48,119 nt of DNA from Caecitellus pseudoparvulus (GCA_965644315.1 CBFFRQ010000210.1:1-48119); one strand, 5' to 3'; shown: positions 1 through 43,448, numbered from the stretch's first letter. Numbers and translations are program-made. Notes: generated from the sequence alone by a model not told the origin.

Positions 1-2
1 CA

Positions 3-3000
3 GCATGTTGTGTCGTTGAGATTGATACTCTTGTAAGCTGCAGAGCGTGTCGGGGAACAAGCCTGGTCATTACACAAAGCAGCTTGACAAGCATTAGGTC
101 TGGTGCATTTGATGGCCTCTATAGCCTCACACGCCTGGACCTGCGCGAGAACTCTCGCCTGGCCAGCCTTCCATCTGGCGTATTTGCCAGCCTCACCAAC
201 CTCACACACTTGGACTTGGGCAACACGTATGCCCTCACAAGCCTGTCGATAGGCGTGTTTGACGGCCTCACCAGCCTCAAACACTTGGATTTGGACGCAA
301 ACGATGCCCTGACCAGCCTGCCTGCGGGCGTGTTTGACAGCCTCACCAACCTCGCGAACCTGGACCTGAGCAGGAACTATGCCCTGACCAGTCTTCCATC
401 TGGCGTATTTGCCAGCCTCCCCAGCCTTACAAACCTGGAACTGAGCCACAACACAGCCCTGAGCAGCCTTCCTGGAGGCGTATTTGACGGCCTCATTAAC
501 CTTACGCACCTGCACCTGAGAGGCAATGATGACTTGATTAGCCTGCCTGTGGGCGTGTTTGACAGCCTCAGCAAGCTCACATACCTGGACCTGAGTGGCA
601 ACGATGCCCTGACCAGCCTGCCTGTGGGCGTGTTTGACAACCTCACCAGCCTCAGTACACTGGTCCTGGGTATGAAAGGCCTGACAAGCCTTCCTGAAGG
701 CGTCTTCCATGGCCTAAGTAGCCTCACAAGCCTGGACTTGCGCAGCTGCGATGCTTTGACCAGCCTGCCTGCCGGTATGTTTGAGAACCTCACAAGTCTT
801 GAGCTGAGTGAGCACACCTTGTCAAGCCTGCCAACAGGTTTCTTTGGCAGACTCATGGGCCTTGAGTATCTGGGGGTTCGTTTTATTGAACAAAGTACGC
901 TGCAGCTGGGCGTATTTGCCGGCCTTGGTGGCCTCTCGACCTTGAACTTAGCAGGGTTTTACTCTGGGTCGAAAGGACTGACCAGCCTGCCTGTGGGTGT
1001 GTTTGACGACCTCGCCAACCTCACTGTCTTGGACCTGGGCCACAACCAACTAGCCAGCCTGCCTATGGGTATGTTTGACCGCCTGACCAACCTCACTGTC
1101 TTGGACCTGGGCCACAATCAACTAGCCAGCCTGCCTATGGGTGTGTTTGACCGCCTGACCAACCTTACTGTGTTGGACCTGGGCCACAACAAACTGGCAA
1201 GCCTGCCTGTGGGTGTGTTTGACCGCCTCTCAAGCCTCACGAGCCTGCACCTCGGCAGCAACCAACTGGCAAGCCTGCCTGTGGGCGTGTTTGACCGCCT
1301 CACAAGCCTTACACGTCTGCATCTAAGTTACAACAAGTTGGTCAGACTAAATGTGGGTGTGTTTGACAGCCTAACCAGCCTAACCTACGTGGACTTAGGC
1401 GACAATCCGCAACTCTCATACTTGCCTGTGGGCGTGTTTGACAGACTTACCAGCCTCACATACATGGACCTGAGTTCCAACAACCTGGCCAGTCTTCCTG
1501 TGGGTGTATTTGACCGCCTTACTATCCTCACAGACCTGTACCTGAGCGACAACGATGAGCTGACAAGCCTGCCTGTGGGTGTATTTGACTCACTGACGAG
1601 CCTTAAAGTTCTGTTCCTTCGAAACAATTTTCGCCTGACCAGCCTGCCAGTGGGCGTCTTTGACAGACTCACAGGGCTCACAGAACTGTACCTGAGTTTT
1701 ACCCGTCTCACAAGCCTTCCCTTGGGCGTGTTTGACAGCCTCACAAGCCTCAAAATATTGTACATGAGTGAAAACGACCTGACCAGCCTACCACGGGGTG
1801 TGTTTGACATGCTCACCAGCCTGACAAACCTTGGCTTGGGATCGAATTATCTCCTAGCCAGTCTGCCATCCGGTGTATTTGACAGGCTCACCAGCCTCAA
1901 GATCCTTGACTTGAGTGACAACCGTGCTTTGACTACCCTGCCGCCAGGAGCCTTTGACCACCTCACAAGCCTGACAACGTTGCGACTGCAAGGAAACAGT
2001 TTTACTCCCAATGGACTGACAACCCTGCCGCCTGGCGTGTTTGACAGCCTTACCAGCCTCACATGGCTTGACTTGAGCTGGATTCGTGACCTGACCAGCC
2101 TGCCGACGGGCGCGTTTGACAGCCTCACCAGCCTGACGACCTTGAACGTGTACGGATCTGCATTTTCAAGCCATTGCCCCCCACCGTCTCCGTCATCCAT
2201 CAACTGCTCCATGCAAGATGTCCCCATTCCATCCAACCCTCGCTTCTGCATGTGCTACGGCTGCCCCACAACTCAACCACTCTCTACCTTGTCGCTCAGG
2301 TGTGCTGAGCCAGCCAGCTGCTCGGCCACATCAGGCGACGACACAATCATTGTGCGGGAGGGTGTAACTGTAGATTGTTCAGGGATCAACTCCTGCACTA
2401 GCACCAGTATGTTCTGCATTCGCACATCAACCCCAAGTCTCTGCAGTTTGTCGTGCACTGGACTGGGCTCTTGTGCAGGAAGTACGCTGTATGGTGAGTG
2501 GAACTGTGCCGGCAACGGCTGCCCAACTGCAGTGGATGTGGTGTGCTTGCCAGGCCAACGGCTGCCTCTGGCTTCATCATTGCCAGGGCCTACACCTTCC
2601 CTGCTGGCATCTCCAAGCCCGAGCCCGTCTCCTTGCATTCCAAGCAAAGCGATGCCTTGTACTTCTGCTACTTCATCCCCAAAACCTCAGCCATCCCCAC
2701 CCCGTTCAGCATGGGCCCTTGCTCCCTCCTCACACAACTCCTCATCCCATCTTCGCATTGCCCCTCCCTTCTCTGCACAGCTCGCATGTGCTGAACACTG
2801 CTCTTCCCCACAAGCCCTCATCCTACCCTGCCCTCGACCAGGCTCATGCCTTCCCCACTCCGACGTGCGCCTCCTCACAGCCTGTCAGCCTGGACACCGC
2901 GGCCTCGCATGCCAAGCCTGTGCCGACGGCTGGGCTGCTACCTCCCCCTGCACCACATGCCGCCAGTGTCCCTACGATGGCCTGGCGCCAGGTGTCGTCA

Positions 3001-5108
3001 AGGTGGGCGCCACAGCCGCTCAGATAGCGCTGGGACTGGCCGTGTCCCTCTTCGCGGTGCACGGCTATGCACGTGCTCCAGACCGTGTCGCAACGACCCT
3101 GTTCAGTGGCGGCCTGCGCCTGGCCATGTGGTACATCGGCATGGCGGGGCAGGTGGCGCTGCTGGCTGCCGACACGCCAGGCACACTGCAGGCGACAGCC
3201 CACACCCTGGGCCACTGGGCCGACGTCTGTGGCATGGCCCAGCCCTGGCGAGCTGGCCAAGAGCAGACTCTGCCGCCCAACGGCACCATGTACGCACGCC
3301 AGCCTGAGCCAGCCCAAGGCGTGGATGTCCTGGGCATCCTGGGCGCACTCACAGGGCGGGCTGGCATTGCGACAATGCCGAGTGCGGGGTGTCTCACAGG
3401 CGGAGGCGACAGCCGCAGCCCGCATGACATGGCCAACATCATCATGGCCGTGTACGGCGCCGTGCTGCTGTGTGCCAGTGCCTCTGTGCTGTGGTGCGCT
3501 CGCCCTGCTCCTGGCAAGACCTGGGCCATCATCATGCTGCTCCTGGCGCCAGCGGCGTACATGCAGGTGGTGCCCAGTGTCATCCAGGGCCAGGCCCGCA
3601 TCGTGGGGCTGCAGCCAGTGTGGCGCGGCATGTCCAGTCCGGATGATGTCGCTGGGCATGCGGCTGACGTGGGCGGCTACGCTGCCTCCCTGACGCTGCA
3701 GTGCTTGGCTGCCACGGTGGGTGTGCTGAGTGTGCTGGCGTGGCGGCAGTGGCGGAGGTCGGAACACTTGCTGCCCCGGGGGGCGTCCATCGCTGCCTAC
3801 TGCACGATGGGGTACCGCATGCAGTACACACCACAGCAAGCAGTCCGCCTCGCTGACGCAACAGGTGCAGACAAGGCACTCAAAGCATCGGCTATCGCAG
3901 CAGCACGAGCCAGCGAGCGTGCCTGCTGCGGTGCCGGGCGCCTCCTGCCCACACACGCCTTCCCTGCCCTGCAGATGGCCCTTGTCGTCCTGGTGGCGGT
4001 CATGGGCAGCATGACGACATCCGTCGTGGCCCGCCTCGTGTGTGTGGGTGTGGGTGTGGCGGGCAGCATGGCCCTCGTGCAGCACCGTCGGCCGTGGGCG
4101 CTGGCTGAGCTGAGCGACCTGGACGTCCTGGCCCATGGCGGCATCCTCGTGCAGGTGGTGTGTGTGGGTGTGGGCACAGTAGGCGGTGGACTGGCCACTG
4201 CCGCACCCATCATCTCCGGCGTCGGGCATGTGCTTGTGCTGCTGTGGCTGGCCATGGCTGTCGCTCGAGGGTACAGTGGCCGGGTGCGAGCACTGCTGGC
4301 ACGTATGGGTCGGCGCCTGCGAGCACTGCTGCCTGAGCTGGGGCCAGCCAGTGCAAGAAGTGGTAGCAGTGGTCAGCTGGGCGATGTGGCTGACAGCCAA
4401 GTGCCGGGTGTGGGCAGCATTGTGTGGGCGTTGGTGCAGCGGTGTGTGCGGCGAGGTGAGGTGCGGCCGGCAGCGCCTCGTCCAGCGTCGGATGTGTTGA
4501 GTGTGCTGGGCATGGTGCATGAGCAGGGACTGTCCGTGGAGACTGGCATGGCGGATGTGGTGGGTGACTCGGGGTCGACTCTGGTGGCCATGCCGTCTGG
4601 AAGCGGTGTCAAACAACCCGCCTCTGGGAGTGACCTGGCAGGCCAGGCTGAGGCCTCAAGAAATCCGCTTGAAGGGTTCAGCACTGGAGCCCCCAGCCAC
4701 ACAGTGCACGGAGCCAATCCGATGCTGCAGGCGACTGGACGTGGCCGGCAACCCCTGCGCGTCGCGAGGCCATCTCTTGGCTCTGCGCCTCCGAACCGTG
4801 CACGTGACTTGCCAACTGTCCAACCTCAAGAGGATCGCGGGCCGAGTAGTGTGCGACAGAACCTGCCTGCAGAGCTCTCGGGGCCCGGTGCAGCCCAGCG
4901 ACGCCCAAGTGCAGCGCAGGCGCTGCTGTCTCAAGAGCTTAGTCCCGGACAGGGTGTGGGAGAGCAATCCGAGCACGGCGCGCCGGCAACTGCTGGCCAG
5001 GCGGGGCGGCGCATGTCAGGTGTTCGCAACGTGGACGGCCGTGGCCGCCTGTCGTTCTCAGGGGCCGCCCGCAGGCGGAGCTCGGTGCATGAGGTTCCGA
5101 AGCCATGA
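3..5108 (+). CDS. LRR-ectodomain multi-pass membrane receptor-like protein, copy 1 (5'-truncated by window)
   Basis: Frame is open from base 3 (ACCVVEIDTLVSCRACRGTSL, matching the N-cap ACCEVEGSTLVSCNACGGTSL of copy 2). About 28 LRRs (LTSLPVGVFDxLTSLTxLDLS), Cys-rich cap, Pro/Ser stalk, CQPGHRGLACQACADGW module, about 9 hydrophobic segments, cytoplasmic tail, TGA at 5108. Confidence 0.9.
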   Translation, partial: ACCVVEIDTLVSCRACRGTSLVITQSSLTSIRSGAFDGLYSLTRLDLRENSRLASLPSGVFASLTNLTHLDLGNTYALTSLSIGVFDGLTSLKHLDLDANDALTSLPAGVFDSLTNLANLDLSRNYALTSLPSGVFASLPSLTNLELSHNTALSSLPGGVFDGLINLTHLHLRGNDDLISLPVGVFDSLSKLTYLDLSGNDALTSLPVGVFDNLTSLSTLVLGMKGLTSLPEGVFHGLSSLTSLDLRSCDALTSLPAGMFENLTSLELSEHTLSSLPTGFFGRLMGLEYLGVRFIEQSTLQLGVFAGLGGLSTLNLAGFYSGSKGLTSLPVGVFDDLANLTVLDLGHNQLASLPMGMFDRLTNLTVLDLGHNQLASLPMGVFDRLTNLTVLDLGHNKLASLPVGVFDRLSSLTSLHLGSNQLASLPVGVFDRLTSLTRLHLSYNKLVRLNVGVFDSLTSLTYVDLGDNPQLSYLPVGVFDRLTSLTYMDLSSNNLASLPVGVFDRLTILTDLYLSDNDELTSLPVGVFDSLTSLKVLFLRNNFRLTSLPVGVFDRLTGLTELYLSFTRLTSLPLGVFDSLTSLKILYMSENDLTSLPRGVFDMLTSLTNLGLGSNYLLASLPSGVFDRLTSLKILDLSDNRALTTLPPGAFDHLTSLTTLRLQGNSFTPNGLTTLPPGVFDSLTSLTWLDLSWIRDLTSLPTGAFDSLTSLTTLNVYGSAFSSHCPPPSPSSINCSMQDVPIPSNPRFCMCYGCPTTQPLSTLSLRCAEPASCSATSGDDTIIVREGVTVDCSGINSCTSTSMFCIRTSTPSLCSLSCTGLGSCAGSTLYGEWNCAGNGCPTAVDVVCLPGQRLPLASSLPGPTPSLLASPSPSPSPCIPSKAMPCTSATSSPKPQPSPPRSAWALAPSSHNSSSHLRIAPPFSAQLACAEHCSSPQALILPCPRPGSCLPHSDVRLLTACQPGHRGLACQACADGWAATSPCTTCRQCPYDGLAPGVVKVGATAAQIALGLAVSLFAVHGYARAPDRVATTLFSGGLRLAMWYIGMAGQVALLAADTPGTLQATAHTLGHWADVCGMAQPWRAGQEQTLPPNGTMYARQPEPAQGVDVLGILGALTGRAGIATMPSAGCLTGGGDSRSPHDMANIIMAVYGAVLLCASASVLWCARPAPGKTWAIIMLLLAPAAYMQVVPSVIQGQARIVGLQPVWRGMSSPDDVAGHAADVGGYAASLTLQCLAATVGVLSVLAWRQWRRSEHLLPRGASIAAYCTMGYRMQYTPQQAVRLADATGADKALKASAIAAARASERACCGAGRLLPTHAFPALQMALVVLVAVMGSMTTSVVARLVCVGVGVAGSMALVQHRRPWALAELSDLDVLAHGGILVQVVCVGVGTVGGGLATAAPIISGVGHVLVLLWLAMAVARGYSGRVRALLARMGRRLRALLPELGPASARSGSSGQLGDVADSQVPGVGSIVWALVQRCVRRGEVRPAAPRPASDVLSVLGMVHEQGLSVETGMADVVGDSGSTLVAMPSGSGVKQPASGSDLAGQAEASRNPLEGFSTGAPSHTVHGANPMLQATGRGRQPLRVARPSLGSAPPNRARDLPTVQPQEDRGPSSVRQNLPAELSGPGAAQRRPSAAQALLSQELSPGQGVGEQSEHGAPATAGQAGRRMSGVRNVDGRGRLSFSGAARRRSSVHEVPKP
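1017..1232 (+). repeat. Three near-identical 72-bp LRR-coding units
   Basis: aacctcactgtcttggacctgggccacaa... recurs at 1017, 1089 and 1161 (NLTVLDLGHNQ/KLASLPM/VGM/VFDRL). Confidence 0.9.
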
Positions 5109-6600
5109 AGGAACGCAGCGAAGTCGTACCTGATTTATAGGACAAGCTGCATTCAAAGTTAGAACTTCTGCATTTGCTGGAGGGTGTGTACTTGGCAAAG
5201 GCTGTGCATTTCTCTTTGCCATTTCTTGCGCCAAGCTGTTGCAGCTGCTTGCATAGATCACACCTACCTTGATAAGAAAGCCTCCGCCCCCCTACCATGT
5301 ACGGACTGCCCCCGCCTGCGCACTTCAAGGGCCCAGCTGTTGCTATCATCGAGGCCCAACATGCATGCTCTCTGTGTTGTGCATCCACTGGCAAGCCGCC
5401 TGCATTGAAGGCAAGCCAGGATGCAGACAGTGCGGTGCAAGCGAGCACCGAAATCAGGTTCCAACAAAACGAGTGGCCGAACTAACACACTCCATGAGCT
5501 CGAAGGGCTCGCCACAACCGGTGAGCCTCAGGGCATATTATGCTCGCACCGGACCTGGAGTTTGAACAGGACTGCTCGTGTGACTCACAGCCCAACGCAG
5601 CATTGCGGTCAAACCGCAGCACAACGCAAGCCATGAGCGTGCCGCGCCTCCAACATGGCATCATTAGATGGCAGAGCGAGCTACAAGTTCTATGAAGTGT
5701 TTGGAAGCCCCATGCTGTGTGGGCGCGCCGAACGGGATGCACGTCAACATGGCCAAGCTTGATCCAGGCTAAGGATGAATCCACACTGACTGCGCGAGCA
5801 CGCAGCACTGATCAAGGCCATCATCACTTGTAGCAGACCCCCATATACCTGTGGGGTGCACGAGGCAAGCAGGTACGACTTGCTGCCTTGACCTGGCAAG
5901 CTGGCGGTTGGGAGGAAGAAGAGTGGCAAGCGTTTCGCGCGAAACGCAAGCCCAAGTCTCATGCCTCAAGCTCTGAGCCATTCCCACGTAACAGACAAAA
6001 CACATACCCTTCACGCACTGCTTCAATTGAGAGTTGCCGAAGCTGACCTTGCTTGCTTGCTGCATTTCACATCACCAGGCTTGCAGTCAGGCAGGGGAGG
6101 TGTCAGCTTGCAACGGGCGGCACTCCCGCTTGACAGACAGACACACCAGGCCTCTGTCACGCAGCCTTCAAGCTCGAAACCGGATTCAAGGAAGCAATCG
6201 TAGGAAACGATTGAAGCAGACCGACGATTTCTTGTGCTGCTGCGCCCTGTCGTCCTTGGGTGGGCGTGAAACACCGCGCTTCGCTCAGGCGCAAGTACAG
6301 CCTGCAGAGCTCGCGCGCACACACCAGCCCAGAACGCAGGACCTCTGCACTGTGACGGGCATGGCGAATCCGCGCAAGTGTGTGGAAACTTGCCCAGGTC
6401 TTGTGGGGTGCCTGCGTACCACCTGCAGCTGGAGGCAGGGGAATCGGTCGAGTACGGATGAAGGCACCGCTCACAGACTTCCCTTGGGACATGGTACAAA
6501 GGCTCCGGCGTCGAGGAGTGTCAGGATCGGGTCAAGGGCTGGGTGGGGGGGGCTGCTCTGGTTGACTTGCGTGGTGAGCTTGTGGGCTGGAGTGATGGGG
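2700..6600 (+). repeat. Segmental tandem duplication: constant part of the repeat unit (TM/tail coding region + intergenic spacer + 5' leader), first instance
   Basis: About 2700-6600 aligns with about 9365-13260 at an offset of 6661-6665 nt; for example the stop codons at 5108 and 11769 are followed by the same aggaacgcagcgaagtcgtacctg sequence. Confidence 0.92.
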
Positions 6601-9600: not shown

Positions 9601-11769
9601 GCTACCTCCCCCTGCACCACATGTCGCCAGTGCCCCTTCAATGGCCTGGCGCCAGGTGTCGTCAAGGTGGGCGCCACAGCCGCTCAGATAGCGCTGGGAC
9701 TGGCCGTGTCCCTCTTCGCGGTGCACGGGTATGCTCGTGCTCCAGACCGTGTCGCAACGACCCTGTTCAGTGGCGGCCTGCGCCTGGCCATGTGGTACAT
9801 CGGCATGGCGGGGCAGGTGGCGCTGCTGGCTGCCGACACGCCAGGCACACTGCAGGCGACAGCCCACACCCTGGGCCACTGGGCCGACGTCTGTGGCATG
9901 GCCCAGCCCTGGCGAGCTGGCCAAGAGCAGACTCTGCCGCCCAACGGCACCATGTACGCACGCCAGCCTGAGCCAGCCCAAGGCGTGGATGTCCTGGGCA
10001 TCCTGGGCGCACTCACAGGGCGGGCTGGCATTGCGACAATGCCGAGTGCGGGGTGTCTCACAGGCGGAGGCGACAGCCGCAGCCCGCATGACATGGCCAA
10101 CATCATCATGGCCGTGTACGGCGCCGTGCTGCTGTGTGCCAGTGCCTCTGTGCTGTGGTGCGCTCGCCCTGCTCCTGGCAAGACCTGGGCCATCATCATG
10201 CTGCTCCTGGCGCCAGCGGCGTACATGCAGGTGGTGCCCAGTGTCATCCAGGGCCAGGCCCGCATCGTGGGGCTGCAGCCAGTGTGGCGTGGCATGTCCA
10301 GTCCGGATGATGTCGCTGGGCATGCGGCTGACGTGGGCGGCTACGCTGCCTCCCTGACGCTGCAGTGCTTGGCTGCCACGGTGGGTGTGCTGAGTGTGCT
10401 GGCGTGGCGGCAGTGGCGGAGGTCGGAACACTTGCTGCCCCGGGGGGCGTCCATCGCTGCCTACTGCACGATGGGGTACCGCATGCAGTACACACCACAG
10501 CAAGCAGTCCGCCTCGCTGACGCAACAGGTGCAGACAAGGCACTCAAAGCATCGGCTATCGCAGCAGCACGAGCCAGCGAGCGTGCCTGCTGCGGTGCCG
10601 GGCGCCTCCTGCCCACACACGCCTTCCCTGCCCTGCAGATGGCCCTTGTCGTCCTGGTGGCGGTCATGGGCAGCATGACGACATCCGTCGTGGCCCGCCT
10701 CGTGTGTGTGGGTGTGGGTGTGGCGGGCAGCATGGCCCTCGTGCAGCACCGTCGGCCGTGGGCGCTGGCTGAGCTGAGCGACCTGGACGTCCTGGCCCAT
10801 GGCGGCATCCTCGTGCAGGTGGTGTGTGTGGGCGTGGGCACAGTAGGCGGTGGACTGGCCACTGCCGCACCCATCATCTCCGGCGTCGGGCATGTGCTTG
10901 TGCTGCTGTGGCTGGCCATGGCTGTCGCTCGAGGATACAGTGGCCGAGCCCGAGCACTGCTGGCACGTATGGGTCGGCGCCTGCGAGCACTGCTGCCTGA
11001 GCTGGGGCCAGCCAGTGCAAGAAGTGGTAGCAGTGGTCAGCTGGGCGATGTGGCTGACAGCCAAGTGCCGGGCGTGGGCAGCATTGTGTGGGCGTTGGTG
11101 CAGCGGTGTGTGCGGCGAGGTGAGGTGCGGCCGGCAGCGTCTCGTCCAGCGACGGATGTGCTGAGTGTGCTGGGCATGGTGCAGGAGCAGGGACTGACCG
11201 TGGAGACTGGCATGGCGGGTGTGGTGGGTGACTCGGGGTCAACTCTGGTGGCCGTACAATCTGGAAGCGGTGTCAAACAACCCGCCTCTGGGAGTGACCT
11301 GGTAGGTCAGGCTGAGGCCTCAAGAAATCCGCTTGAAGGGTTCAGCACTGGAGCCCCCAACCACACAGTGCACGGAGCCAATCCGATGCTGCAGACGACT
11401 GGACGTGGCCGGCAACCCCTGCGCGTCGCGAGGCCATCTCTTGGCTCTGCGCCTCCAAACCGTGCACGTGACTTGCTAGCTGTCCAGCCACAAAGTGGCG
11501 GGCCGGGTAGTGTGCGACAGAACCTGCCTGCAGAGCTCTCGGGGCCCGGTGCAGCCCAGCGACGCCCAAGTGTAGCGCAGGCGCTGCTGTCTCAAGAGCT
11601 TAGTCCCGGACAGAGTGTAGGAGAGCAATCCGAGCACGGCGCGCCGGCAACTGCTGGCCAGGCGGGGCGGCGCATGTCGGGTGTTCGCAACGTGGACGGC
11701 CGTGGCCGCCTGTCGTACGCAGGGGCCGCCCGCAGGCGGAGCTCGGTGCATGAGGTTCCGAAGCCATGA
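6361..11769 (+). CDS. LRR-ectodomain multi-pass membrane receptor-like protein, copy 2
   Basis: First ATG at 6361 (MANPRKCVETC), paralogous to the ATG at 13026. Hydrophobic signal-like segment GWGGLLWLTCVVSLWAG, about 28 LRRs, C-terminal half almost identical to copy 1. Confidence 0.9.
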   Translation: MANPRKCVETCPGLVGCLRTTCSWRQGNRSSTDEGTAHRLPLGHGTKAPASRSVRIGSRAGWGGLLWLTCVVSLWAGVMGGVPACCEVEGSTLVSCNACGGTSLNISHSYFSSINASAFDDLASLTSLSLYKCSFWNGLPLGVFDALSGLTYLDLHGTYVPSSLLSDWFSSLPNLMYLDLSYSGLRSLPDGLFDGLASLTHLTMKGGRTWSRGGLTSLQPGVFSSLNNLTHLDLSHNTGLTSLPIGIFDNLTSLVTLDLGYNEDLNNLPAGVFDSLTSLTSLNLTRSTALTSLLPGVFDSLINLRTLHLSYSPALASLPSDVFDSLARLTHLAMGRSYYLTSLPPGVFQNLTSLRSLDLSSNYALTSLPEGVFDSLTNLTSLDLSNNAALSTLSEGTFRNLISLKTLDLSEARTLVALPPGLFDNLTSLTSLSLQGYRYWTSGGLTSLAPGVFNRLASLSSLDLSNNRDLTSLPVGIFDRLTSLTTLDLSHNYALASLPEGVFDSLTSLTTLDLSYDSRLTSIPSGAFSRLASLTKLDLRSCSFLSSLPTGSFDSLSSLTTLDLSDNSALASLPPNVFVGLVSLTTLKLRNNFNLETLSSGIFDGLSSLLHLDLSRSNDLLRLPPDVFSSLTSLTSLDLSFSRNLSSLPPGIFGNLSSLTTLDLSNSDALSSVPPGVFRGLTSLTTLDLSKNRALSNLSFGVFSGLASLSSLFLSGHEYWTRGGLMSLSSGIFDGLLSLTTLDLSNNRYLTSLPGGAFYDLTSLIRLDLSRTSQLARVQPGIFDRLSSLRQLGLSTMYALQSLPVGVFDSLTSLAHLDVSGSTFARYCPPPSSSAINCSMQDGPLQYNPRMCLCSGCPTAPPLANTTLNCDEPNSCSVGTGDDSFILQEGASVHCSGSDSCRNASMFCIHPSTPSPCNVSCTGEGSCVGIGLYGVWNCTAGDCPPAIDVVCAPSQFLESTPTPSPSNSPSPSTSPSSSPMMTSYSGASSSPSPSPTPQPSPPRSAWALALSSHNSSSHLRIAPPFSAQLACAEHCSSPQALILPCPRPGSCLPHSDVRLLTACQPGHRGLACQACADGWAATSPCTTCRQCPFNGLAPGVVKVGATAAQIALGLAVSLFAVHGYARAPDRVATTLFSGGLRLAMWYIGMAGQVALLAADTPGTLQATAHTLGHWADVCGMAQPWRAGQEQTLPPNGTMYARQPEPAQGVDVLGILGALTGRAGIATMPSAGCLTGGGDSRSPHDMANIIMAVYGAVLLCASASVLWCARPAPGKTWAIIMLLLAPAAYMQVVPSVIQGQARIVGLQPVWRGMSSPDDVAGHAADVGGYAASLTLQCLAATVGVLSVLAWRQWRRSEHLLPRGASIAAYCTMGYRMQYTPQQAVRLADATGADKALKASAIAAARASERACCGAGRLLPTHAFPALQMALVVLVAVMGSMTTSVVARLVCVGVGVAGSMALVQHRRPWALAELSDLDVLAHGGILVQVVCVGVGTVGGGLATAAPIISGVGHVLVLLWLAMAVARGYSGRARALLARMGRRLRALLPELGPASARSGSSGQLGDVADSQVPGVGSIVWALVQRCVRRGEVRPAASRPATDVLSVLGMVQEQGLTVETGMAGVVGDSGSTLVAVQSGSGVKQPASGSDLVGQAEASRNPLEGFSTGAPNHTVHGANPMLQTTGRGRQPLRVARPSLGSAPPNRARDLLAVQPQSGGPGSVRQNLPAELSGPGAAQRRPSVAQALLSQELSPGQSVGEQSEHGAPATAGQAGRRMSGVRNVDGRGRLSYAGAARRRSSVHEVPKP

Positions 11770-13260
11770 AGGAACGCAGCGAAGTCGTACCTGATTTATA
11801 GGACAAGCTGCATTCAAAGTTAGAACTTCTGCATTTGCTGGAGGGTGTGTACTTGGCAAAGGCTGTGCATTTCTCTTTGCCATTTCTTGCGCCAAGCTGT
11901 TGCAGCTGCTTGCATAGATCACACCTACCTTGATAAGAAAGCCTCCGCCCCCCTACCATGTACGGACTGCCCTCGCCTGCGCACTTCAAGGGCCCAGCTG
12001 TTGCTATCATCGAGGCCCAACATGCATGCTCTCTGTGTTGTGCATCCACTGGCAAGCCGCCTGCATTGAAGGCAAGCAAGGAAGGATGCAGAAAGTACGG
12101 TGGAAACGAGCACCGAAATCAGGCTCCAACGAAGCAAATTACACGAACCAACACACTCCATGAGCTCGAAGGGCTCGCCACAACCGGTGAGCCTTAGGGC
12201 ATATCATACCCGTAGCGGACCTTGAGTCTGAACAGGACTGCTCGTGTGACTCACAGCCAAACGCAGCATTGCGGCAACAACCGCAGCGCACCGCAATCCA
12301 AGAGCGTGCCGCGTCTCCAAGATGGCATCATTAGGTGGCACAGCGAGCTGCAAGTGCTATGAAGTGTTTGGAAGCCCCATGCTGTGTGGGCGCGCCGAAC
12401 GGGATGCACGTCAAGATGGCCAAGCTTGATCCAGGCTAAGGATGAATCCACACTGACTGCGCGAGCACGCAGCACTGATCAAGGCCATCATCACTTGTAG
12501 CAGACCCCCATGCAGATATGAAGTGCACAAGGCAAGCAGGTACGTCTTGCTGCCTTGACCAGGCGAGCCGGCGGTTGGCAAGGAGAAGAGTGGCAAGCGT
12601 TTCGCGCGAAACGCGAGCCCAAGTCTCATGCCTCAAGCTCTGAGCCACTGCCACGTAACAGACAAAACGTACACATGGCGTACACTGACTCCATTGAGAG
12701 TCGTCAAAACTAACCTTTCTTGCTTGCTGCATTCCACATGACCAGGCTTGCAGTCAGGCAACAGAGGTGTGCCAGCTTGCAACAAGCGGCACTCCCGCTT
12801 GACAGACACACCAGGCCTCTGTCACGCAGCCTTCAAGCTCGAAACCGGATTCAAGGAAACAATCGTAGGAAACGATTGAAGCAGACCGACGATTTCTTGT
12901 GCTGCTGCGCCCTGTCGTCCTTGGGTGGGCGTGAAACACCGCGCTTCGCTCAGGCGCAAGTACAGCCTGCAGAGCTCGCCCACACACACTAGCCCAGAGC
13001 GCGGGACCTCTGCACTGTGGCGAGAATGGCGATCACACAAAAGTGTGTGGAAACGTGCACAGGTCTTGTGGGGTGCCTGCGTACCACCTGCAGCTGGAGG
13101 CAGGGGAATCGGTCGAGTGCGGATAGAGGCATCTCACACAGACTTCCCTTGACACATGGTATACAGGCATCAGTGTGGAGGAGCGTCAGGATCGGGGCAA
13201 GGGCTGGGTGGGGGGGGCTGCTCTGGTTGACTTGCGTGGTGGGCCTGTGGGCCGCAGCAA
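9365..13260 (+). repeat. Segmental tandem duplication: constant part of the repeat unit, second instance
   Basis: Near-identical to about 2700-6600. Its coding part also matches about 15230-17615 of copy 3 at lower identity. Confidence 0.92.
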
Positions 13261-16200
13261 TCGGGGACGTGCCATTATGCTGCGTGGTGGAGGGTGACAC
13301 TCTGATGAGCTGTAGCGGATGTGGGGGAACAAGCCTGAACATTTCGGGAAACAGCTTCAAGAACATAAGTGCCAATGCTTTTGATAACTTTGCAAGTCTC
13401 ACGAGCCTGGACCTTGGCCACAACTTTGGCCTGACCAGCCTGCCGTCGGGAGTGTTTGATCACCTGCACAACCTGAGCACCCTTTCTATAGCGGGACACA
13501 AGCAGTGGGTCGGAGGTGGGTTGCAGACCCTGCTGCCAACTACCTTCAACAACCTTACCAGCCTCACGTACCTAGATCTGAGTGGTAACGGCGCCCTGGC
13601 CAACTTGCCGCAAGGCTTGTTTGCTCACCTTTGCAACCTCACACACCTGGACCTGAGCGGCACGGGTCTGTCCGGCTTCCCTCCAGATATGTTCAGCAGC
13701 CTTACAAGCCTTACGAAGTTGTTCTTGGGTGGCAACAATGCTCTATCGAGCCTGCCCCCGGGGGTGTTTGACAGCTTGACCAACCTCGCAGTCCTTGGCC
13801 TGGGTCACACCAGCTTGGCAAGCCTGCCATCACATATATTTGATAACCTCTCCAGCCTCAAAAGGTTGAGTCTAGCCTATAATGGCCTGACGAACCTGCC
13901 ATCGGGGGTGTTTCGTAACCTCAGGAGCCTTGCAGACCTGGACCTGAGATCCAACGACCTGACCAGCCTTCCGCCTGGCGTGTTTGGCAGCCTCACCAGC
14001 CTTTCACACTTGGATCTTAGCTTCAACTTTGCCTTGGCCAGCCTGCCAGCGGGCGTGTTTGGCAACACCACCAGCCTCACATACTTGAGCCTGAGGCGCG
14101 CCGACGTCAGTAGTCTGTCTCCCGGCGTGTTTGATAGCCTGACAAACCTCACTCACCTGGATCTGAGCTATAATTATGGCCTGGCAAGCCTGCCTGTAGG
14201 CGTGTTCGACAACCTCTCTAGCCTCGCATACCTGGACCTCAGTTATGGTAGTGCCTTGAGTAGCTTGCCTGTGGGAGTGTTTCACAGCCTCACAAGCCTC
14301 ACGTCCCTGCACTTGAACTACAACGATGCCTTGGCCAGCCTTTCTGTGGACGTGTTTGACAGCCTCACCAGCCTGACCACCTTGAACGTCTACGGGTCTG
14401 CATTTTCAAGCCGGTGCCCCCCACCATCTCCATCTGCCATAAACTGCTCCATGCAGGACGGACCGCTCCAGCACAGTCCTAAACTGTGCTTGTGCAGTGG
14501 CTGTCCCACAGCACCCCCACTCTCAATCACGTCACTCAGCTGTACTGAACCACGAAGCTGCTCAGTCGGAAATGGTGTTCACTCGGTCGCCCTGGAAGCG
14601 GGTGCTTCCGTGCATTGTTCGGGGAGTGACTCCTGCAGAAACGCCAGCATGTTCTGCACATCCCTTTCAATCCCGAGACCTTGTAACGTTTCGTGCACTG
14701 GAGAGAACTCCTGTGTGAACATGGCGCTGTATGGTGTGTGGAACTGCACAGCGGGCGCTTGTCCAGCTGCTGTCGATGTGGTGTGTGCTCCAAGCCAAAA
14801 CGTGCTGGAGAGCTCACCCACACCGAGCCCTTCCAACTCCCCCTCACCATCTACATCCCCCAGCAGTTTTCCGTCAATCACAAGCAGCAGCAGCGCCAGC
14901 GTGACAGGTACGGCATCCAGAACGCCCAGATCCACCACCACTGACCCACCAACGTCAACGGGCACTCCGTCGGTGACATCCAGTGGTCGCAGCATTGGTT
15001 CCAGGAGTACAACTCCCACCACCACTGTCACACCGACTCCATCAAGCTCGCCATCTTCAACCTCCAGCAGCACAAGCACAATTAGCCCGACTGTCAGTCC
15101 AACGCAAACTGTCACACCAACCAGCACAACCACCAGCACCCCCACAGCTGTTTCGCCCCACTCGAGCACTTCCATGCCCAATCCCTCAACATTCCCAAGC
15201 CCATCCTCCACACCCAAACCGTCCTTGCCCCGCTCAGCTTGGGCACTCACCCCCTCCTCACACAACTCCTCATCCCACCTTCGCGTTGCTCCCCATCTCT
15301 CAGCACAGCTCGCGTGTGCCAAGCACTGCTCCTCCCCACAAGCCCTCATCCTACCCTGCCCTCGACCAGGCTCATGCCTTCCCCACTCCGACGTGCGCCT
15401 CCTCACAAGCTGCCAGCCTGGACACCGCGGCCTCGCATGCCAAGCCTGTGACGACGGCTGGGCTGCTACCTCACCCTGCACCACATGTCGCCAGTGCCCC
15501 TTCAATGGCATGGCGCCAGGTGTCATCAAGGCAGGCACCACAGCCGCACAGATGGTGCTAGGGCTACTCACGTCCCTCTTTGCAGTGCACGGCTATGCAC
15601 GTGCTCCAGACCGTGTCGCGACAACCCTGTTCAGTGGCGGCCTGCGCCTGGCCATGTGGTACATCGGCATGGCGGGGCAGGTGGCACTATTGGCTGCCGA
15701 CACGCCAGGCACACTGCAGGCGACAGCTCACACGCTGGGCCACTGGACCGATGTATGTGGCATGGTCCAGCCCTGGCGAGCAGGCCAAGGCCAGGTCCTG
15801 CCGCCCAACGGCACCATGTACGCCAGCCAGCCTGAGCCAGCCCAAGGCGTCGATGTGCTGGGCATCCTAGGCGCACTCACAGGGCGGGCTGGCGTCGCGA
15901 CAATGCCAAGTGCCGGGTGTCTCACGGGCGGAGGCGACAGCCGCAGCCCGCATGACATGGCCAACATCATCATGGCCTTGTACGGCGCTGTTCTGTTGTG
16001 TGTCAGTGCCGCCGTGCTCTGGTGTTCTAGCCCTCCACCTGGCAAGACCTGGACCACCATCCTGCTGCTCCTGGCGCCAGCGGCGTACATGCAGGTGGTG
16101 CCCAGTGTCATCCAGGGCCAGGCCCGTGTCGTGGGGCTGCAACCAGTGTGGCGTGGCATGTCCAGTCCAGACGATGTCGCTGGGCATGCGGCTGACGTGG

Positions 16201-17633
16201 GCGGGTACGCTGCCTCCCTGACACTGCAGTGCTTGGCTGCCACGGTGGGTGTGCTGAGTGTGCTGGCGTGGCGGCAGTGGCGCAGGTCGGAACAGCTGCT
16301 GCCGCGGGGGGCGTCCATTCCTGCCTACTGCACGATGGGGTACCGCATGCAGTACACGCCACAACAAGCAGTGCGCCTCGCTGATGCAACAGGAGCAGAC
16401 AAGGCACTCAAAGCAGCGGCTGTCGCAGCAGCACGCGCCAGTGAGCGTGCTTGCTGCGGTGCTGGGCGACTCCTGCCCACACACGCCTTCCCTGCCCTGC
16501 AAATGGCCCTCGTCGTGCTGGTGGCGGTCATGGGCAGCATGACGACATCCATCGTGGCTCGCCTGGTGTGTGTGGGTGTGGGTGTGGCAGGCAGCATGGC
16601 CCTCGTGCAGCACCGTCGGCCGTGGGCGCTGGCTGAGCTGAGCGACCTGGATGTCCTGGCCCATGGGGGCATCCTCGTGCAGGTGGTGTGTGTGGGCGTG
16701 GGCACGGTGGGTGGTGGACTGGCCACTGCTGCATCCATCATCTCCGGCATCGGGCACGTGCTTGTGCTGCTGTGGCTAGCTCTGACTGTCGCCCGGGGGT
16801 ACAGTGGCCGCGCACGAGAAGTGATGGCACGTGTAGGCCGGCGTCTGCGAGCACTGCTGCCTGAGCTGGGGCCAGCCAGTGCAGGAAGTGGCAGCAGTGG
16901 TCAGCTGGGCGATGTGGCTGACAGCCAAGTGCCGGGTGTGGGCAGCATTGTGTGGGCGTTGGTGCAGCGGTGTGTGCGGCGAGGCGAGGTGCGGCCGGGA
17001 GCGTCTCGCCCAGCGTCAGATGTGTTGAGTGTGCTGGGCATGGTGCAGGAGCAGGGACTGAGCGTGGAGACTGGCATGGCGGATGTGGTGGGCGACTCTG
17101 CTTCAACCCTGATGACCATGCCGTCTGCACGTGACATGCACCGATCCGCCTCAGCAGAGCGAGATGGTGGCCAGCTGAAGTCTTCAAGAAATCCGCTTGA
17201 AAGTTTCAGCACTGGAGCATCTAACCGCACAGTGCACGGAGCAAACCCAATGCTGCAGGCGACTGGACGTGGCCGGCAACCCCTGCGCGTCGCGAGGCCA
17301 GCTCTTGGCTCTGCGCCTCCAACTGTACGTGACTTGCCACCTGTTCAGCCACAGAGTGGCGATACACTGAACGGTGAGCAGACGGCCTCAACTCCAATCG
17401 CCCCAGTAGACGTCATCGCCCAACGGCGGGCGAGTGTAGCGCAGGCGCTGCTGTCTCAAGAACTTAGTCCCGGACAGAGTGTAGGAGAGCAATCCGAACA
17501 CGGCGCGCCAGAATCTGCTGGCCAGGCGGGGCGGCGCATGTCAGGTGTTCGCAACGTGGACGGCCGTGGCCGCCTGTCGTTCGCAGGGGCCGCCCGCAGG
17601 CGGAGCTCGGTGCATCGGACCTCACGTCCTTGA
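13026..17633 (+). CDS. LRR-ectodomain multi-pass membrane receptor-like protein, copy 3 (14 LRRs, long S/T stalk)
   Basis: ATG at 13026 (MAITQKCVETC). Same architecture, about 14 LRRs, about 140 aa Ser/Thr/Pro mucin-like stalk, TM region more diverged from copies 1 and 2. Confidence 0.9.
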   Translation: MAITQKCVETCTGLVGCLRTTCSWRQGNRSSADRGISHRLPLTHGIQASVWRSVRIGARAGWGGLLWLTCVVGLWAAAIGDVPLCCVVEGDTLMSCSGCGGTSLNISGNSFKNISANAFDNFASLTSLDLGHNFGLTSLPSGVFDHLHNLSTLSIAGHKQWVGGGLQTLLPTTFNNLTSLTYLDLSGNGALANLPQGLFAHLCNLTHLDLSGTGLSGFPPDMFSSLTSLTKLFLGGNNALSSLPPGVFDSLTNLAVLGLGHTSLASLPSHIFDNLSSLKRLSLAYNGLTNLPSGVFRNLRSLADLDLRSNDLTSLPPGVFGSLTSLSHLDLSFNFALASLPAGVFGNTTSLTYLSLRRADVSSLSPGVFDSLTNLTHLDLSYNYGLASLPVGVFDNLSSLAYLDLSYGSALSSLPVGVFHSLTSLTSLHLNYNDALASLSVDVFDSLTSLTTLNVYGSAFSSRCPPPSPSAINCSMQDGPLQHSPKLCLCSGCPTAPPLSITSLSCTEPRSCSVGNGVHSVALEAGASVHCSGSDSCRNASMFCTSLSIPRPCNVSCTGENSCVNMALYGVWNCTAGACPAAVDVVCAPSQNVLESSPTPSPSNSPSPSTSPSSFPSITSSSSASVTGTASRTPRSTTTDPPTSTGTPSVTSSGRSIGSRSTTPTTTVTPTPSSSPSSTSSSTSTISPTVSPTQTVTPTSTTTSTPTAVSPHSSTSMPNPSTFPSPSSTPKPSLPRSAWALTPSSHNSSSHLRVAPHLSAQLACAKHCSSPQALILPCPRPGSCLPHSDVRLLTSCQPGHRGLACQACDDGWAATSPCTTCRQCPFNGMAPGVIKAGTTAAQMVLGLLTSLFAVHGYARAPDRVATTLFSGGLRLAMWYIGMAGQVALLAADTPGTLQATAHTLGHWTDVCGMVQPWRAGQGQVLPPNGTMYASQPEPAQGVDVLGILGALTGRAGVATMPSAGCLTGGGDSRSPHDMANIIMALYGAVLLCVSAAVLWCSSPPPGKTWTTILLLLAPAAYMQVVPSVIQGQARVVGLQPVWRGMSSPDDVAGHAADVGGYAASLTLQCLAATVGVLSVLAWRQWRRSEQLLPRGASIPAYCTMGYRMQYTPQQAVRLADATGADKALKAAAVAAARASERACCGAGRLLPTHAFPALQMALVVLVAVMGSMTTSIVARLVCVGVGVAGSMALVQHRRPWALAELSDLDVLAHGGILVQVVCVGVGTVGGGLATAASIISGIGHVLVLLWLALTVARGYSGRAREVMARVGRRLRALLPELGPASAGSGSSGQLGDVADSQVPGVGSIVWALVQRCVRRGEVRPGASRPASDVLSVLGMVQEQGLSVETGMADVVGDSASTLMTMPSARDMHRSASAERDGGQLKSSRNPLESFSTGASNRTVHGANPMLQATGRGRQPLRVARPALGSAPPTVRDLPPVQPQSGDTLNGEQTASTPIAPVDVIAQRRASVAQALLSQELSPGQSVGEQSEHGAPESAGQAGRRMSGVRNVDGRGRLSFAGAARRRSSVHRTSRP

Positions 17634-17955
17634 GGGAAAGCAGAAGTGCAACCTCTGGCTGTCAATACATACCTCATGTTCCCCCCACAGTCCGTCTCAT
17701 GTGTCAACGAACCATCACCCGCTTCCTCTGCCATTCAACAAATCCACACTCCCAATCTCAAGTCCGGCACACCACTATCGCCTAAACAATATCCAGTTTT
17801 CTACACTGCTTCCCGGCCTCGCTTTGCTTTTCGTTCCAAGCGCCAACACGGCTCGAGCTCCAGCCAGGTCCATGCACAATTTCGACAAGCTTGCACTCCA
17901 AGTGTTGCGCTGCAAGGCACGCCCGCATGGCAGGAGGCAGCACGCTTGAAGCATC

Positions 17956-19133: not shown

Positions 19134-19210
19134 GACTGTGCTGTGGCTGACGCGTGCGCCGTGCGCGAGTCAGCAAGCATTGGGTGCTGCTGCGTTGCGA
19201 GGTTGTGCAT

Positions 19211-43148: not shown

Positions 43149-43448
43149 GGCGTGAGGGTGTAGGGCTCAAGCAAGCGCCGCAGCGGGACTCGGCCAGCGT
43201 CGCCTGATTTTTGTGAGTGTCCATCGATTGTGCCAGAACGATGCTAGCCACTTGCACGAGGCTGAGGGGCACAAAACTCCCCTGCAAAACAGCCTTGTTG
43301 ACCTTGCAGCCGCAAGCTATCAGGCCGTGCGGTCATGATTTCTGCGAGGGTTGGCGGTTGAGGAAGCCGGAGAGGTACACCATCGGGATTGCCGCCAATA
43401 AGTTCAGCAGACGCTGCTGCCTTTCCAAAAGCGCGCACTGCAAACGAG

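What the first reader, a model, noticed from the sequence alone, without database searches (positions are those of the whole stretch)
1..17633. Tandem array of 'variable LRR + constant multi-TM' receptors: candidate diversified recognition system in a protist
Seen: three head-to-tail intronless genes. The membrane/tail half and even the 1.25-kb noncoding spacer are nearly identical between copies, but the LRR regions differ in repeat number (about 28/28/14) and order and cannot be aligned one-to-one. Variation concentrates in the x positions of LxxLxLxxN, while the LTSLPxGVFDxL scaffold is fixed. Known: this LRR consensus followed by a Cys cap and T/P stalk is the design of lamprey/hagfish VLRs, whose variable concave face binds antigen. 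Inference: a rapidly diversifying surface receptor family (prey, virus or self/non-self sensing) with a constant signalling module, convergent on VLR. The array runs off the window edge, so more copies may exist.
Basis: partly seen in the sequence, partly recalled or inferred. Interest (0 to 1): 0.88.

Follow-up and report, generated by a model that had tools for sequence, protein, structure and literature searches.

The report
LRR receptors on shared nine-helix module
Three neighbouring genes of a marine protist encode large surface proteins with old, very different leucine-rich-repeat heads joined to an undescribed nine-helix membrane part that gene conversion keeps almost identical, and about 40 genes with quite different heads share that same membrane part.

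Summary
Three head-to-tail intact ORFs carry 28, 28 and 14 LRR modules. Each has a Cys-rich cap, an S/T/P stalk, a Cys knot, nine membrane helices and a 220-aa tail. Copies 1 and 2 are 95-100% identical from the stalk end through the spacer into the next gene's leader.

The heads are old, not fast: synonymous divergence in the well-aligned cap is 1.5 between copies 1 and 2, against 0.02 in the membrane core. So the "constant" half is the product of recent gene conversion or unequal crossing-over.

The membrane module is not special to LRR genes. About 40 genes carry it, with FG-GAP, RCC1-like, ephrin-receptor-like or unknown heads. At least two core pools are each homogenised across head types.

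Exposed strand and loop positions of the LRR evolve near neutrality (omega 0.9-1.4). Convex positions give 0.5 and the hydrophobic core 0.14. This fits a ligand-binding face but does not prove positive selection.

No donor cassettes exist, and the LRR fold matches generic extracellular LRRs, so the VLR likeness is superficial. The nine-helix module has no Pfam family and no PDB fold match. Atlas look-alikes include uncharacterised LRR/DUF7630 multi-pass proteins of other eukaryotes. Function remains inferred.

The parts
3..5108 (+). Gene c1, cut at its 5' end by the contig end (about 85 codons missing). LRR array 3-2174 (28 modules). Cys-rich cap and S/T/P stalk 2175-2675. Constant part 2676-5108.
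982..1589 (+). Run of 72-bp (24-aa) LRR modules inside c1. Three consecutive modules are nearly identical, which points to recent within-array module duplication.
2676..6677 (+). Homogenised tract, copy 1: constant half of c1, the 1.25-kb spacer and the leader plus N-cap of c2. It is 94.9% identical to 9340-13342.
5109..6360 (.). Spacer 1. It has no Rfam match. A second copy lies at 11770-13025 (91%) and a third upstream of the C95 paralog (84%).
6361..11769 (+). Gene c2 (1802 aa). Leader with hydrophobic signal or anchor 6361-6603. N-cap plus 28 LRR 6604-8841. Cys-rich cap and stalk 8842-9339. Constant part 9340-11769.
9460..9651 (+). Juxtamembrane Cys-rich knot, DUF7630-like (19 bits, below the 27-bit cut-off; 16 of 21 family members match weakly).
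9652..10938 (+). Nine-helix membrane module of c2. Predicted N-end outside and C-end inside. Conserved R in helices 2 and 7. Conserved motifs GYRxQ, RRPW..EL.DLD and RGYS.
10939..11769 (+). Cytoplasmic tail of c2. It is disordered and carries conserved short motifs (LPELG, GANPxL, QRRxS, RRMSG..DxRGRxSF).
11770..13025 (.). Spacer 2.
13026..17633 (+). Gene c3 (1535 aa). Leader, then N-cap plus 14 LRR to 14414. Cys-rich cap and a long (about 170 aa) S/T/P stalk to about 15190. Constant part 15194-17633. It has a near-identical paralog on contig C95.

Best explanation
What it is. The three genes belong to a family of about 40 modular surface proteins in this 30.6-Mb protist genome. Each protein has, in order:
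- a leader with one hydrophobic signal or anchor segment;
- an exchangeable ectodomain, here a 'typical'-class LRR solenoid of 14-28 repeats with Cys-rich N- and C-caps;
- a mucin-like S/T/P stalk;
- a small DUF7630-like Cys knot;
- an undescribed nine-helix membrane module (N-end out, C-end in);
- a roughly 220-aa cytoplasmic tail with conserved RRxS-type motifs.

What is shown. The 'variable head, constant body' pattern is concerted evolution. Gene conversion or unequal crossing-over keeps the membrane half alike; in the tandem pair it also keeps the spacer and the next gene's leader alike. The ectodomains are ancient and are left out of this exchange. They change mainly by gain and loss of whole LRR modules and by near-neutral substitution at exposed strand and loop positions.

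What is inferred. The ectodomain probably binds an external ligand or surface (prey, substrate or other cells). The nine-helix module, with buried conserved arginines and invariant cytoplasmic loop motifs, probably passes this on as a signalling or channel-like unit shared by all heads. Homogenisation would keep it matched to common partners.
For: Anatomy: ORFs, LRR counts and Pfam. Nine helices in the AF2 model (pTM 0.62), with K+R of 23 on the inside loops against 5 on the outside loops. Invariant and near-invariant G339/R341/Q343, R413, D443, R491/G492 and R108 across 21 members down to 23% identity.

Family: 52-56 matches, about 40 genes, in the own genome. Heads are LRR, FG-GAP, RCC1-like, Ephrin_rec_like or none recognised.

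Concerted evolution:
- Core dS is 0.023 for c1-c2 and a flat 0.18-0.30 among 13 clade-A genes on at least 9 contigs, with omega about 0.2.
- Cap dS is 1.48 for c1-c2 and 0.7 to more than 3 for other pairs.
- A Sawyer-type run test gives SSCF 251,809 against 175,598 +/- 7,287, with 0 of 500 permutations reaching it.
- In the c3/C95 twins the core has more synonymous change (0.087) than the LRR (0.018).
- A second core pool (B2) is equally flat across RCC1, LRR and FG-GAP genes.
- LRR and FG-GAP heads both occur on A and on B2 cores.

LRR dynamics: a one-module indel and a 72-bp amplification. Omega is 0.14 for the core, 0.52 for convex x, 0.93 for strand x and 1.42 for the post-N loop.

Reality of the genes: exact short-read unitigs over the c2 LRR. 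Wild relatives at 90-95% occur in a marine metagenome. A seawater metatranscriptome run covers CDS parts but gives zero depth on spacer 5101-6100.
Against: - No experimental or homology-based function exists for the nine-helix module. It has no Pfam family and no PDB fold match beyond generic helical bundles, and the model is of modest confidence (pLDDT 59).
- The surface location and the topology are predictions.
- The start codon is uncertain. About 60 non-conserved codons precede the hydrophobic segment, and omega is 2.06 in the leader of c3/C95.
- The low dS of the core could partly reflect codon or mutational constraint rather than conversion. The Sawyer-type test can also be inflated by regional rate differences.
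- Expression in this organism itself was not shown, because no RNA run holds the stretch.
- The constant halves could not be verified with long reads.
Confidence: 0.6

Rival explanations
1. One reading: a rapidly diversifying, positively selected recognition repertoire convergent on lamprey VLRs, made of a variable LRR on a constant signalling module.
For: The layout LRR, Cys cap, T/P stalk is present. The most variable positions include strand positions 6 and 11 and the loop after N. Omega is 1.42 [1.00-2.26] at the loop and 1.53 [1.03-2.75] at position 11. The repeat number differs between copies. A wild relative's metagenome has the spacer and the constant part at 90% or more, but not the c2 LRR array.
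Against: - Ectodomain dS is saturated while core dS is about 0.02-0.3, so the contrast comes from homogenisation and not from fast LRR change.
- The recent twins c3/C95 have almost identical LRRs (dS 0.018, omega 0.79).
- Strand x positions 5, 8 and 10 are mostly T, D and S.
- With pooled dS the variable sites sit at omega about 1.
- No donor cassettes exist.
- The fold matches generic LRR ectodomains.
- The module is shared with non-LRR heads.
Confidence: 0.2
2. Receptor-channel reading: the nine-helix module is a remote relative of the fungal/algal TRP-like family PF06011 (Flc/Pkd2 type: signal peptide, ectodomain, many helices, cytoplasmic tail). It would act as an ion channel gated or tethered by the ectodomain, in the manner of polycystins.
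For: Atlas shape search gives TM 0.56 to a cluster with Ephrin_rec_like in 78% and PF06011 in 12% of members. Atlas feature search gives 0.90-0.93 to clusters named TRP-domain proteins, with PF06011 in 13-25%. Conserved arginines lie inside helices 2 and 7. The overall topology is the same as I recall for S. pombe Pkd2 (own knowledge, not tested here).
Against: PF06011 does not hit any family member at E up to 10. In the own genome, PF06011 hits and hits of the family profile fall on different loci. Only a minority of members of the Atlas clusters carry PF06011. No solved structure was available to compare with.
Confidence: 0.2
3. Passive adhesin or surface-coat reading: the proteins only display sticky ectodomains on a mucin stalk, and the nine helices are merely an anchor.
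For: The mucin-like stalks vary in length (about 55 to 170 aa). The heads are of adhesin type (LRR, FG-GAP). The same genome has giant members of 4.3-6.7 thousand aa.
Against: A plain anchor needs one helix. Here nine helices, the cytoplasmic loop motifs and the buried charges are conserved down to 23% identity, with omega about 0.2. The tail motifs are kept despite heavy tail divergence.
Confidence: 0.15
4. Assembly artefact or dead genes: the near-identical halves are collapsed or chimeric assembly, or the ORFs are pseudogenes.
For: The window is a short contig that ends inside c1. The constant part breaks into many short unitigs in the short-read data.
Against: The copies are not identical: 95% overall, with spacers at 91%. 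The same pattern recurs in 13 plus 8 genes on many large contigs. The ORFs of 1535-1802 codons are intact, with omega 0.1-0.2 in the core. Exact unitigs span the c2 array and reach 9419, past the identity boundary at 9340.
Confidence: 0.03

Closest known systems
Tomato Cf-4/Cf-9 (Hcr9) clusters of LRR receptor-like proteins (own knowledge: Parniske et al. 1997)
   Same: Tandem paralogs have variable N-terminal LRRs with differing repeat number and a nearly identical C-terminal half. Sequence exchange between paralogs extends into intergenic DNA. Variation falls at solvent-exposed LRR positions.
   Different: Cf proteins are single-pass with a short tail. Here the body is a nine-helix module plus a 220-aa tail, the organism is a heterotrophic stramenopile, and the same body also serves non-LRR heads.
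Lamprey/hagfish variable lymphocyte receptors
   Same: The order N-cap, LRR array, Cys-containing C-cap, Thr/Pro-rich stalk. Variability occurs at some strand and loop positions.
   Different: There is no incomplete germline gene, and no flanking donor cassettes (best other match in the genome is 79%). There are 14-28 repeats rather than a handful. There is no GPI-type end. The ectodomains are germline-encoded and old. Structurally it is no closer to VLR than to Toll, LGR or LRRTM.
LGR-type receptors (LRR ectodomain on a 7-TM GPCR) and polycystin-1 (LRR and other ectodomains on an 11-TM body)
   Same: A large LRR ectodomain is fused to a multi-pass membrane body. LGR4/5 ectodomains are among the top structural matches of the LRR model.
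   Different: There is no 7tm or PKD/REJ/PLAT Pfam signal. There are nine helices, and no fold match to GPCRs or TRP/PKD channels in the PDB.
Uncharacterised eukaryotic 'DUF7630 domain-containing' multi-pass proteins in the ESM Atlas (clusters labelled mostly Cnidaria, Porifera, Chlorophyta, Haptophyta)
   Same: Predicted shape gives TM 0.54-0.57 over about 380 residues. One cluster carries LRR_8 in 78% of its members, and others carry Ephrin_rec_like. The feature score is 0.93-0.95.
   Different: There is no sequence-level link by HMMER. Only 22 hits were found in 1.84 billion representatives, none of them named. DUF7630 scores below its cut-off here. No paper mentions DUF7630.

Membership tests
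Variable lymphocyte receptor (VLR) system | Bank of partial LRR donor cassettes near an incomplete germline gene, used for somatic assembly | tested here: not met
   The genes are complete ORFs. Whole-genome DNA searches with the c1 and c2 arrays find nothing above 79% identity, and the listed matches fall almost all in or next to paralog loci.
Variable lymphocyte receptor (VLR) system | LRRNT, LRR, CP, LRRCT, Thr/Pro stalk, GPI or hydrophobic end | tested here: not met
   The stalk and the Cys caps are present. There is no Pfam LRRNT or LRRCT hit. The C-terminal part is a nine-helix module plus a tail.
Variable lymphocyte receptor (VLR) system | Hypervariable concave face | tested here: inconclusive
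   Positions 6, 11, 13 and 14 are variable, but 5, 8 and 10 are mostly T, D and S. Omega is 0.93 for strand x and 1.42 for the loop, with intervals touching 1.
LGR / rhodopsin-type LRR-GPCR | Seven-helix GPCR domain recognisable by Pfam or by fold | tested here: not met
   No 7tm family was found. Nine helices are predicted. No GPCR stands out in the PDB searches.
PF06011 TRP-like (Flc/Pkd2) membrane proteins | Match to the PF06011 profile | tested here: not met
   No match at E up to 10 in 21 members. PF06011 hits in the genome lie at other loci than the family profile hits.
PF06011 TRP-like (Flc/Pkd2) membrane proteins | Shared fold and topology (ectodomain out, multi-helix body, tail in) | tested here: inconclusive
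   Atlas look-alike clusters carry PF06011 in only 12-25% of members. No solved structure of the family appeared in the PDB searches.
DUF7630-bearing multi-pass proteins (uncharacterised) | DUF7630 Cys knot just before the first helix | tested here: inconclusive
   The score is 17-19 bits against a cut-off of 27 in the window's proteins. 16 of 21 members match weakly. The distant relative P0022 scores 35.8 bits.
Plant-type LRR receptor-like proteins or kinases | Single-pass helix, with or without a kinase domain | tested here: not met
   There is no kinase domain, and the body has nine helices.

The most novel reading that the evidence does not exclude
The nine-helix module with its Cys knot may define an undescribed and widely spread eukaryotic receptor or channel chassis, perhaps remote kin of the TRP-like Flc/Pkd2 proteins. 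Unrelated ectodomains (LRR, FG-GAP, RCC1-like, ephrin-receptor-like) would be swapped onto it. Within a genome it would be held in a few homogenised pools because the bodies must co-assemble or share partners. On this reading the LRR branch is a germline recognition repertoire of a phagotrophic protist.
Probability: 0.25. Interest if true: 0.8.

Novelty: new variant of a known kind. Interest (0 to 1): 0.55.

Why it matters
Heterotrophic marine flagellates must recognise prey, surfaces and each other, yet their surface receptors are almost unknown. This locus shows a receptor-like family built on a membrane module with no Pfam family, no solved relative and, in the library searched, no paper.

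About 40 genes use the module under very different ectodomains, and gene conversion keeps it uniform in at least two pools. That gives a concrete candidate for a modular recognition system outside animals and plants. It is also a clear example of concerted evolution confined to one half of a gene.

The result also corrects a tempting misreading. Variable LRR next to a constant body does not by itself mean that the LRR is evolving fast.

Tried and rejected
- The search for homologous proteins was run with the constant region and with alignment A1. Both came back blank, probably swamped by low-complexity words, so neither is informative.
- PDB searches gave no useful hit. By sequence profile only noise appeared (PTX3, E 0.05). 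Foldseek gave nothing at E of 0.001 or less. VIA wide gave a best Z of 8.3 on designed or generic helical bundles.
- PF06011 membership was rejected at HMMER level.
- A weak JAMP (PF05571) hit in the distant relative P0014 (E 0.015) was not seen in any family member. It is treated as noise or a lead only.
- VLR-like donor cassettes were searched for and not found.
- Rfam finds nothing in 1-20000, so the spacer likeness needs no RNA gene. It diverges about as fast as synonymous sites (91% identity, against tail dS 0.058).
- Tail dS values of 0.3-1.4 are not used as firm evidence because the tail alignment is poor.
I did not try another route.
- No complex-prediction job was sent, because no binding claim is made.
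- The literature searches turned up no paper that I recognised, by title or abstract, as describing this architecture. Tandem LRR expansions in a diatom are reported in PMC7335047.


Full report
**1. Observation**

The window is the whole 48,119-bp contig C210 of a 30.6-Mb, 215-contig genome. Earlier notes of this scan call the organism a marine heterotrophic flagellated stramenopile (not tested by me). Three long + strand ORFs fill 1-17633:
- c1, 3-5108, which lacks about 85 codons at the contig end;
- c2, ATG 6361 to 11769, 1802 aa;
- c3, ATG 13026 to 17633, 1535 aa.

Cutting the arrays at the F-x-x-L anchor gives 28, 28 and 14 LRR modules of 24-25 aa. A few 29-30-aa modules carry a G-x-x-W-x-x-G-G insert. 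Pfam sees only LRR families and a sub-threshold DUF7630 Cys knot.

Self-comparison shows that 2676-6677 matches 9340-13342 at 94.9%. Within that tract the membrane core is 97-100% identical and the spacer 83-100%. The tract runs from the end of the stalk, through the stop codon and the 1.25-kb spacer, into the leader and N-cap of the next gene. c3 is about 89% identical in the constant CDS, and its downstream flank is unrelated. The LRR parts align with each other, and with those of paralogs, in many registers at 65-77%. There is therefore no one-to-one correspondence.

**2. Anatomy of the protein**

From the N-end the protein has these parts.
- A leader of about 60 poorly conserved residues. 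It is followed by one hydrophobic segment preceded by R/K, and then by the conserved start of the N-cap (V-P-x-C-C-V-V-E ... C-x-x-C-G).
- The LRR array.
- A Cys-rich region of about 120 aa that begins C-P-P-P-S.
- An S/T/P-rich stalk of about 55 aa (c1, c2) or about 170 aa (c3).
- A short conserved stretch and a C-x-x-G-H-x-G-x-x-C-x-x-C knot.
- The membrane module.
- A tail of about 220 aa.

An AlphaFold2 model of the module was built on 21 aligned relatives. It has pLDDT 58.9 and pTM 0.62 and shows nine long helices. With the ectodomain outside, the inside loops hold 23 K+R and the outside loops 5. This supports N-end out and C-end in.

Residues conserved down to 23% identity include an Arg in helix 2 and another in helix 7. 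Also conserved are G-Y-R-x-Q and C-C-G in the loop between helices 5 and 6, R-R-P-W-x-L-x-E-L-x-D-L-D between helices 7 and 8, R-G-Y-S after helix 9, and L-P-E-L-G. The tail diverges heavily but keeps short motifs: G-A-N-P-x-L, Q-R-R-x-S and R-R-M-S-G...D-x-R-G-R-x-S-F.

A single-sequence model of the c3 ectodomain gives a confident solenoid (pLDDT 70-90 over the LRRs), but the cap is poorly modelled. Its best PDB matches are LRRTM2, Toll, LGR4/5, TLR3, Lingo-1, designed LRRs and the Nogo receptor. This is the ordinary 'typical' extracellular LRR class, with nothing specific to VLRs.

**3. The family**

The constant half finds 52 places in the genome as a single protein and 56 as a profile. 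This amounts to about 40 genes plus fragments. Among them are ORFs of 4.3-6.7 thousand aa.

I fetched 20 further members. Their cores fall into three clades that are saturated at synonymous sites between one another.
- Clade A has 13 genes, including c1-c3.
- Clade B1 has 2 genes.
- Clade B2 has 8 of those fetched.

The ectodomains do not follow the cores.
- Clade A carries LRR arrays in 11 genes, an FG-GAP giant (L025) and a head without a Pfam match (L024).
- Clade B2 carries RCC1-like propellers, LRR arrays (L035, L036), an FG-GAP giant (L038) and unknown heads.
- Clade B1 carries ephrin-receptor-like Cys repeats.

The LRR-plus-cap of L035 (a B2 core) is up to 60-61% identical in amino acids to those of clade-A genes. 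The two FG-GAP heads are 35% identical over about 1750 residues. Both head types therefore sit on both core types, which a tree without recombination cannot give.

**4. Why one half is constant**

Synonymous divergence separates age from selection.
- In the membrane core (530 codons), dS is 0.023 for c1-c2. Among the clade-A genes compared it is a flat 0.18-0.30, whatever the contig or head, with omega about 0.2.
- In the Cys-rich cap (175 codons, aligned on its cysteines), dS is 1.48 for c1-c2, 0.72 for c2-c3 and 0.9 to more than 3 for other pairs, with omega 0.1-0.3.

The heads of c1 and c2 are thus ancient and under purifying selection, while their 3' halves, the spacer and the next leader are young.

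A Sawyer-type permutation of polymorphic sites in the 13 clade-A cores shows clustering of identical runs. SSCF is 251,809 against 175,598 +/- 7,287, and 0 of 500 permutations reach it. The result holds without the two closest pairs.

The twins c3 and C95 are 96.6% identical over 5 kb including flanks. They show the reverse contrast: LRR dS is 0.018 and core dS 0.087. This is what is expected if one core later received tracts from other paralogs. Clade B2 repeats the flat pattern, with dS 0.22-0.47 across RCC1, LRR and FG-GAP genes.

The simplest reading is concerted evolution of the membrane half, by gene conversion genome-wide and by unequal exchange in the tandem pair. The left boundary lies at the end of the low-complexity stalk. 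Regional constraint on synonymous sites could contribute to the low core dS, and I could not exclude this.

**5. How the LRR arrays change**

- c3 and its C95 twin differ by exactly one 24-aa module.
- c1 holds a run of 72-bp modules, three of them nearly identical.
- c1 and c2 modules have no near-identical partner anywhere in the assembly. Module identities to the nearest neighbour are 0.60-0.85, and whole-genome matches reach at most 79%. There is thus no bank of donor cassettes.

Entropy over 63 modules of the window peaks at positions 11, 6, 13, 20 and 14. Strand positions 5, 8 and 10 are mostly T, D and S.

I then took 212 unique modules of 11 genes and paired each with its nearest neighbour, giving 177 pairs. 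Omega by class is as follows.

| Position class | Omega | Bootstrap 95% |
|---|---|---|
| Hydrophobic core | 0.14 | 0.11-0.16 |
| Convex and other x positions | 0.52 | 0.44-0.60 |
| Strand x positions | 0.93 | 0.76-1.15 |
| Two residues after the Asn | 1.42 | 1.00-2.26 |

Position 11 alone gives 1.53 [1.03-2.75]. With a pooled dS, the variable sites sit at about 1.1-1.4.

The concave and ascending side is therefore the least constrained part, as in ligand-binding LRRs. The data do not go clearly beyond neutrality.

**6. Outside evidence**

HMMER against 1.84 billion cluster representatives finds only 22 proteins. Four of them span the module at 31-44% identity. The ten I looked up are unnamed, all but one from metagenome or SRA assemblies, and the nineteen I scanned have no Pfam family apart from weak DUF7630. 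Of the two whose contigs I read, one sits on a 120-kb contig among eukaryotic genes (CEP76, HECT).

The ESM Atlas gives look-alikes by shape (TM 0.54-0.57) and by features (0.90-0.95) among uncharacterised eukaryotic clusters. One is labelled 'DUF7630 domain-containing' with LRR_8 in 78% of its members. Others carry Ephrin_rec_like, and a minority of their members carry PF06011 'TRP'. PF06011 itself does not match the family, and in this genome it hits other loci. The channel kinship is therefore only a lead.

No paper in the library mentions DUF7630. Tandem LRR expansions as such are known in stramenopiles, for example in the diatom Seminavis (PMC7335047).

**7. Reads**

- Two runs of the same organism hold exact unitigs over the c2 array: 6547-7482 and 7454-9072 with no differences, and 9155-9419 across the identity boundary. 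Summed depth is about 41 in the unique LRR part and above 1000 in the constant part, as expected for a multi-copy segment. These runs may be the data from which the genome was assembled.
- A marine metagenome holds relatives at 90-95% of the constant part and of the spacer, but almost none of the c2 array. This fits turnover of units between strains, or heads that differ by more than 10%.
- A seawater run labelled metatranscriptomic (flagged as possibly DNA) covers 4410-5095, 6239-6669 and 9647-10269, with zero depth on 5101-6100. This weakly suggests that relatives transcribe such genes with a 5' UTR reaching upstream of 6239.
- No RNA run of the organism itself was found.

**8. Verdict**

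The evolutionary reading has to be turned round: the heads are old and diverse, and the body is recently homogenised. The scope also has to be widened, because the body is a family-wide chassis and not an LRR partner.

A role as a surface recognition or adhesion receptor that signals through the nine-helix module is the best-supported function, but it rests on inference from anatomy and conservation. Among systems I know, the closest evolutionary analogue is the tomato Cf-4/9 cluster. The VLR comparison fails its defining tests.

Noticed in passing
window 14122-19127 and L021/L004 (G000:C95:224000-235129): c3 has a twin on contig C95. It is 96.6% identical over 5 kb including 1.5 kb of downstream flank, and 88% identical upstream. 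It differs by exactly one 24-aa LRR module. There is no c2-like gene upstream of it, so it is a segmental duplicate and not an allele of the array.
   Followed up: yes
G000: C44:193739-195445, C44:227915-229501, C34:34491-36152, C38:334345-336012, C67:734318-736045: The nine-helix module also ends giant ORFs of 4.3-6.7 thousand aa (profile E 1e-64 to 1e-84).
   Followed up: no
G000: C171:16229-17594, C89:13326-14691, C147:48705-50070, C99:6983-8348: At four loci the module is split into two adjacent ORFs (profile positions 68-381 and 409-543). Two of the four have a stop inside the first piece. This may be a short-headed subfamily with an intron or a shared frameshift.
   Followed up: no
G000: C141:9933-11921, C69:1416046-1416675, C87:111214-112149, C40:294733-307218, C18:23360-23770 and others: The genome also has a separate set of PF06011 (TRP-like) matches, mostly at the ends of ORFs of 2-6.5 thousand aa. 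Giant ectodomains on multi-pass bodies thus seem to be a general habit of this organism.
   Followed up: partly
window 6361-6603 and 13026-13265: The leader before the hydrophobic segment is long (about 60 aa) and not conserved among paralogs. Between c3 and its twin it has omega 2.06 (20.5 non-synonymous against 3.5 synonymous changes). No ATG lies next to the hydrophobic segment in any LRR paralog. The true start, or a 5' intron, is unresolved. If the segment is not cleaved, the protein has ten helices, with the LRR as a giant loop.
   Followed up: partly
window 6937-7026, 7627-7716, 8467-8556 (c2 aa 193, 423, 703) and 13455-13544 (c3 aa 144): 30-aa LRR modules with a G-x-x-W-x-x-G-G-L insert recur every 9-11 modules in c2. 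This hints at an older super-repeat of the array.
   Followed up: no
window 20205-48093: The rest of the contig holds ordinary eukaryotic genes: a tubulin-tyrosine-ligase family protein (26968-30810 +), a WD40 protein (39469-41226 +), a STELLO-like (43389-45950 +) and a CHGN-like (46351-48093 -) glycosyltransferase, and a TPH-domain protein (22302-23747 -). Two large ORFs have no Pfam match (20205-22247 +, 33813-37745 -).
   Followed up: partly
G000: C18:152422-154552, C155:861-1610, C112:346-1041, C40:172615-173285, C40:246210-248528: Further LRR-array matches lie outside the 20 fetched genes. The one on C18 lies about 0.7 kb from a core fragment that has an internal TGA (C18:154271-154552), so it is probably a decayed family member.
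   Followed up: no
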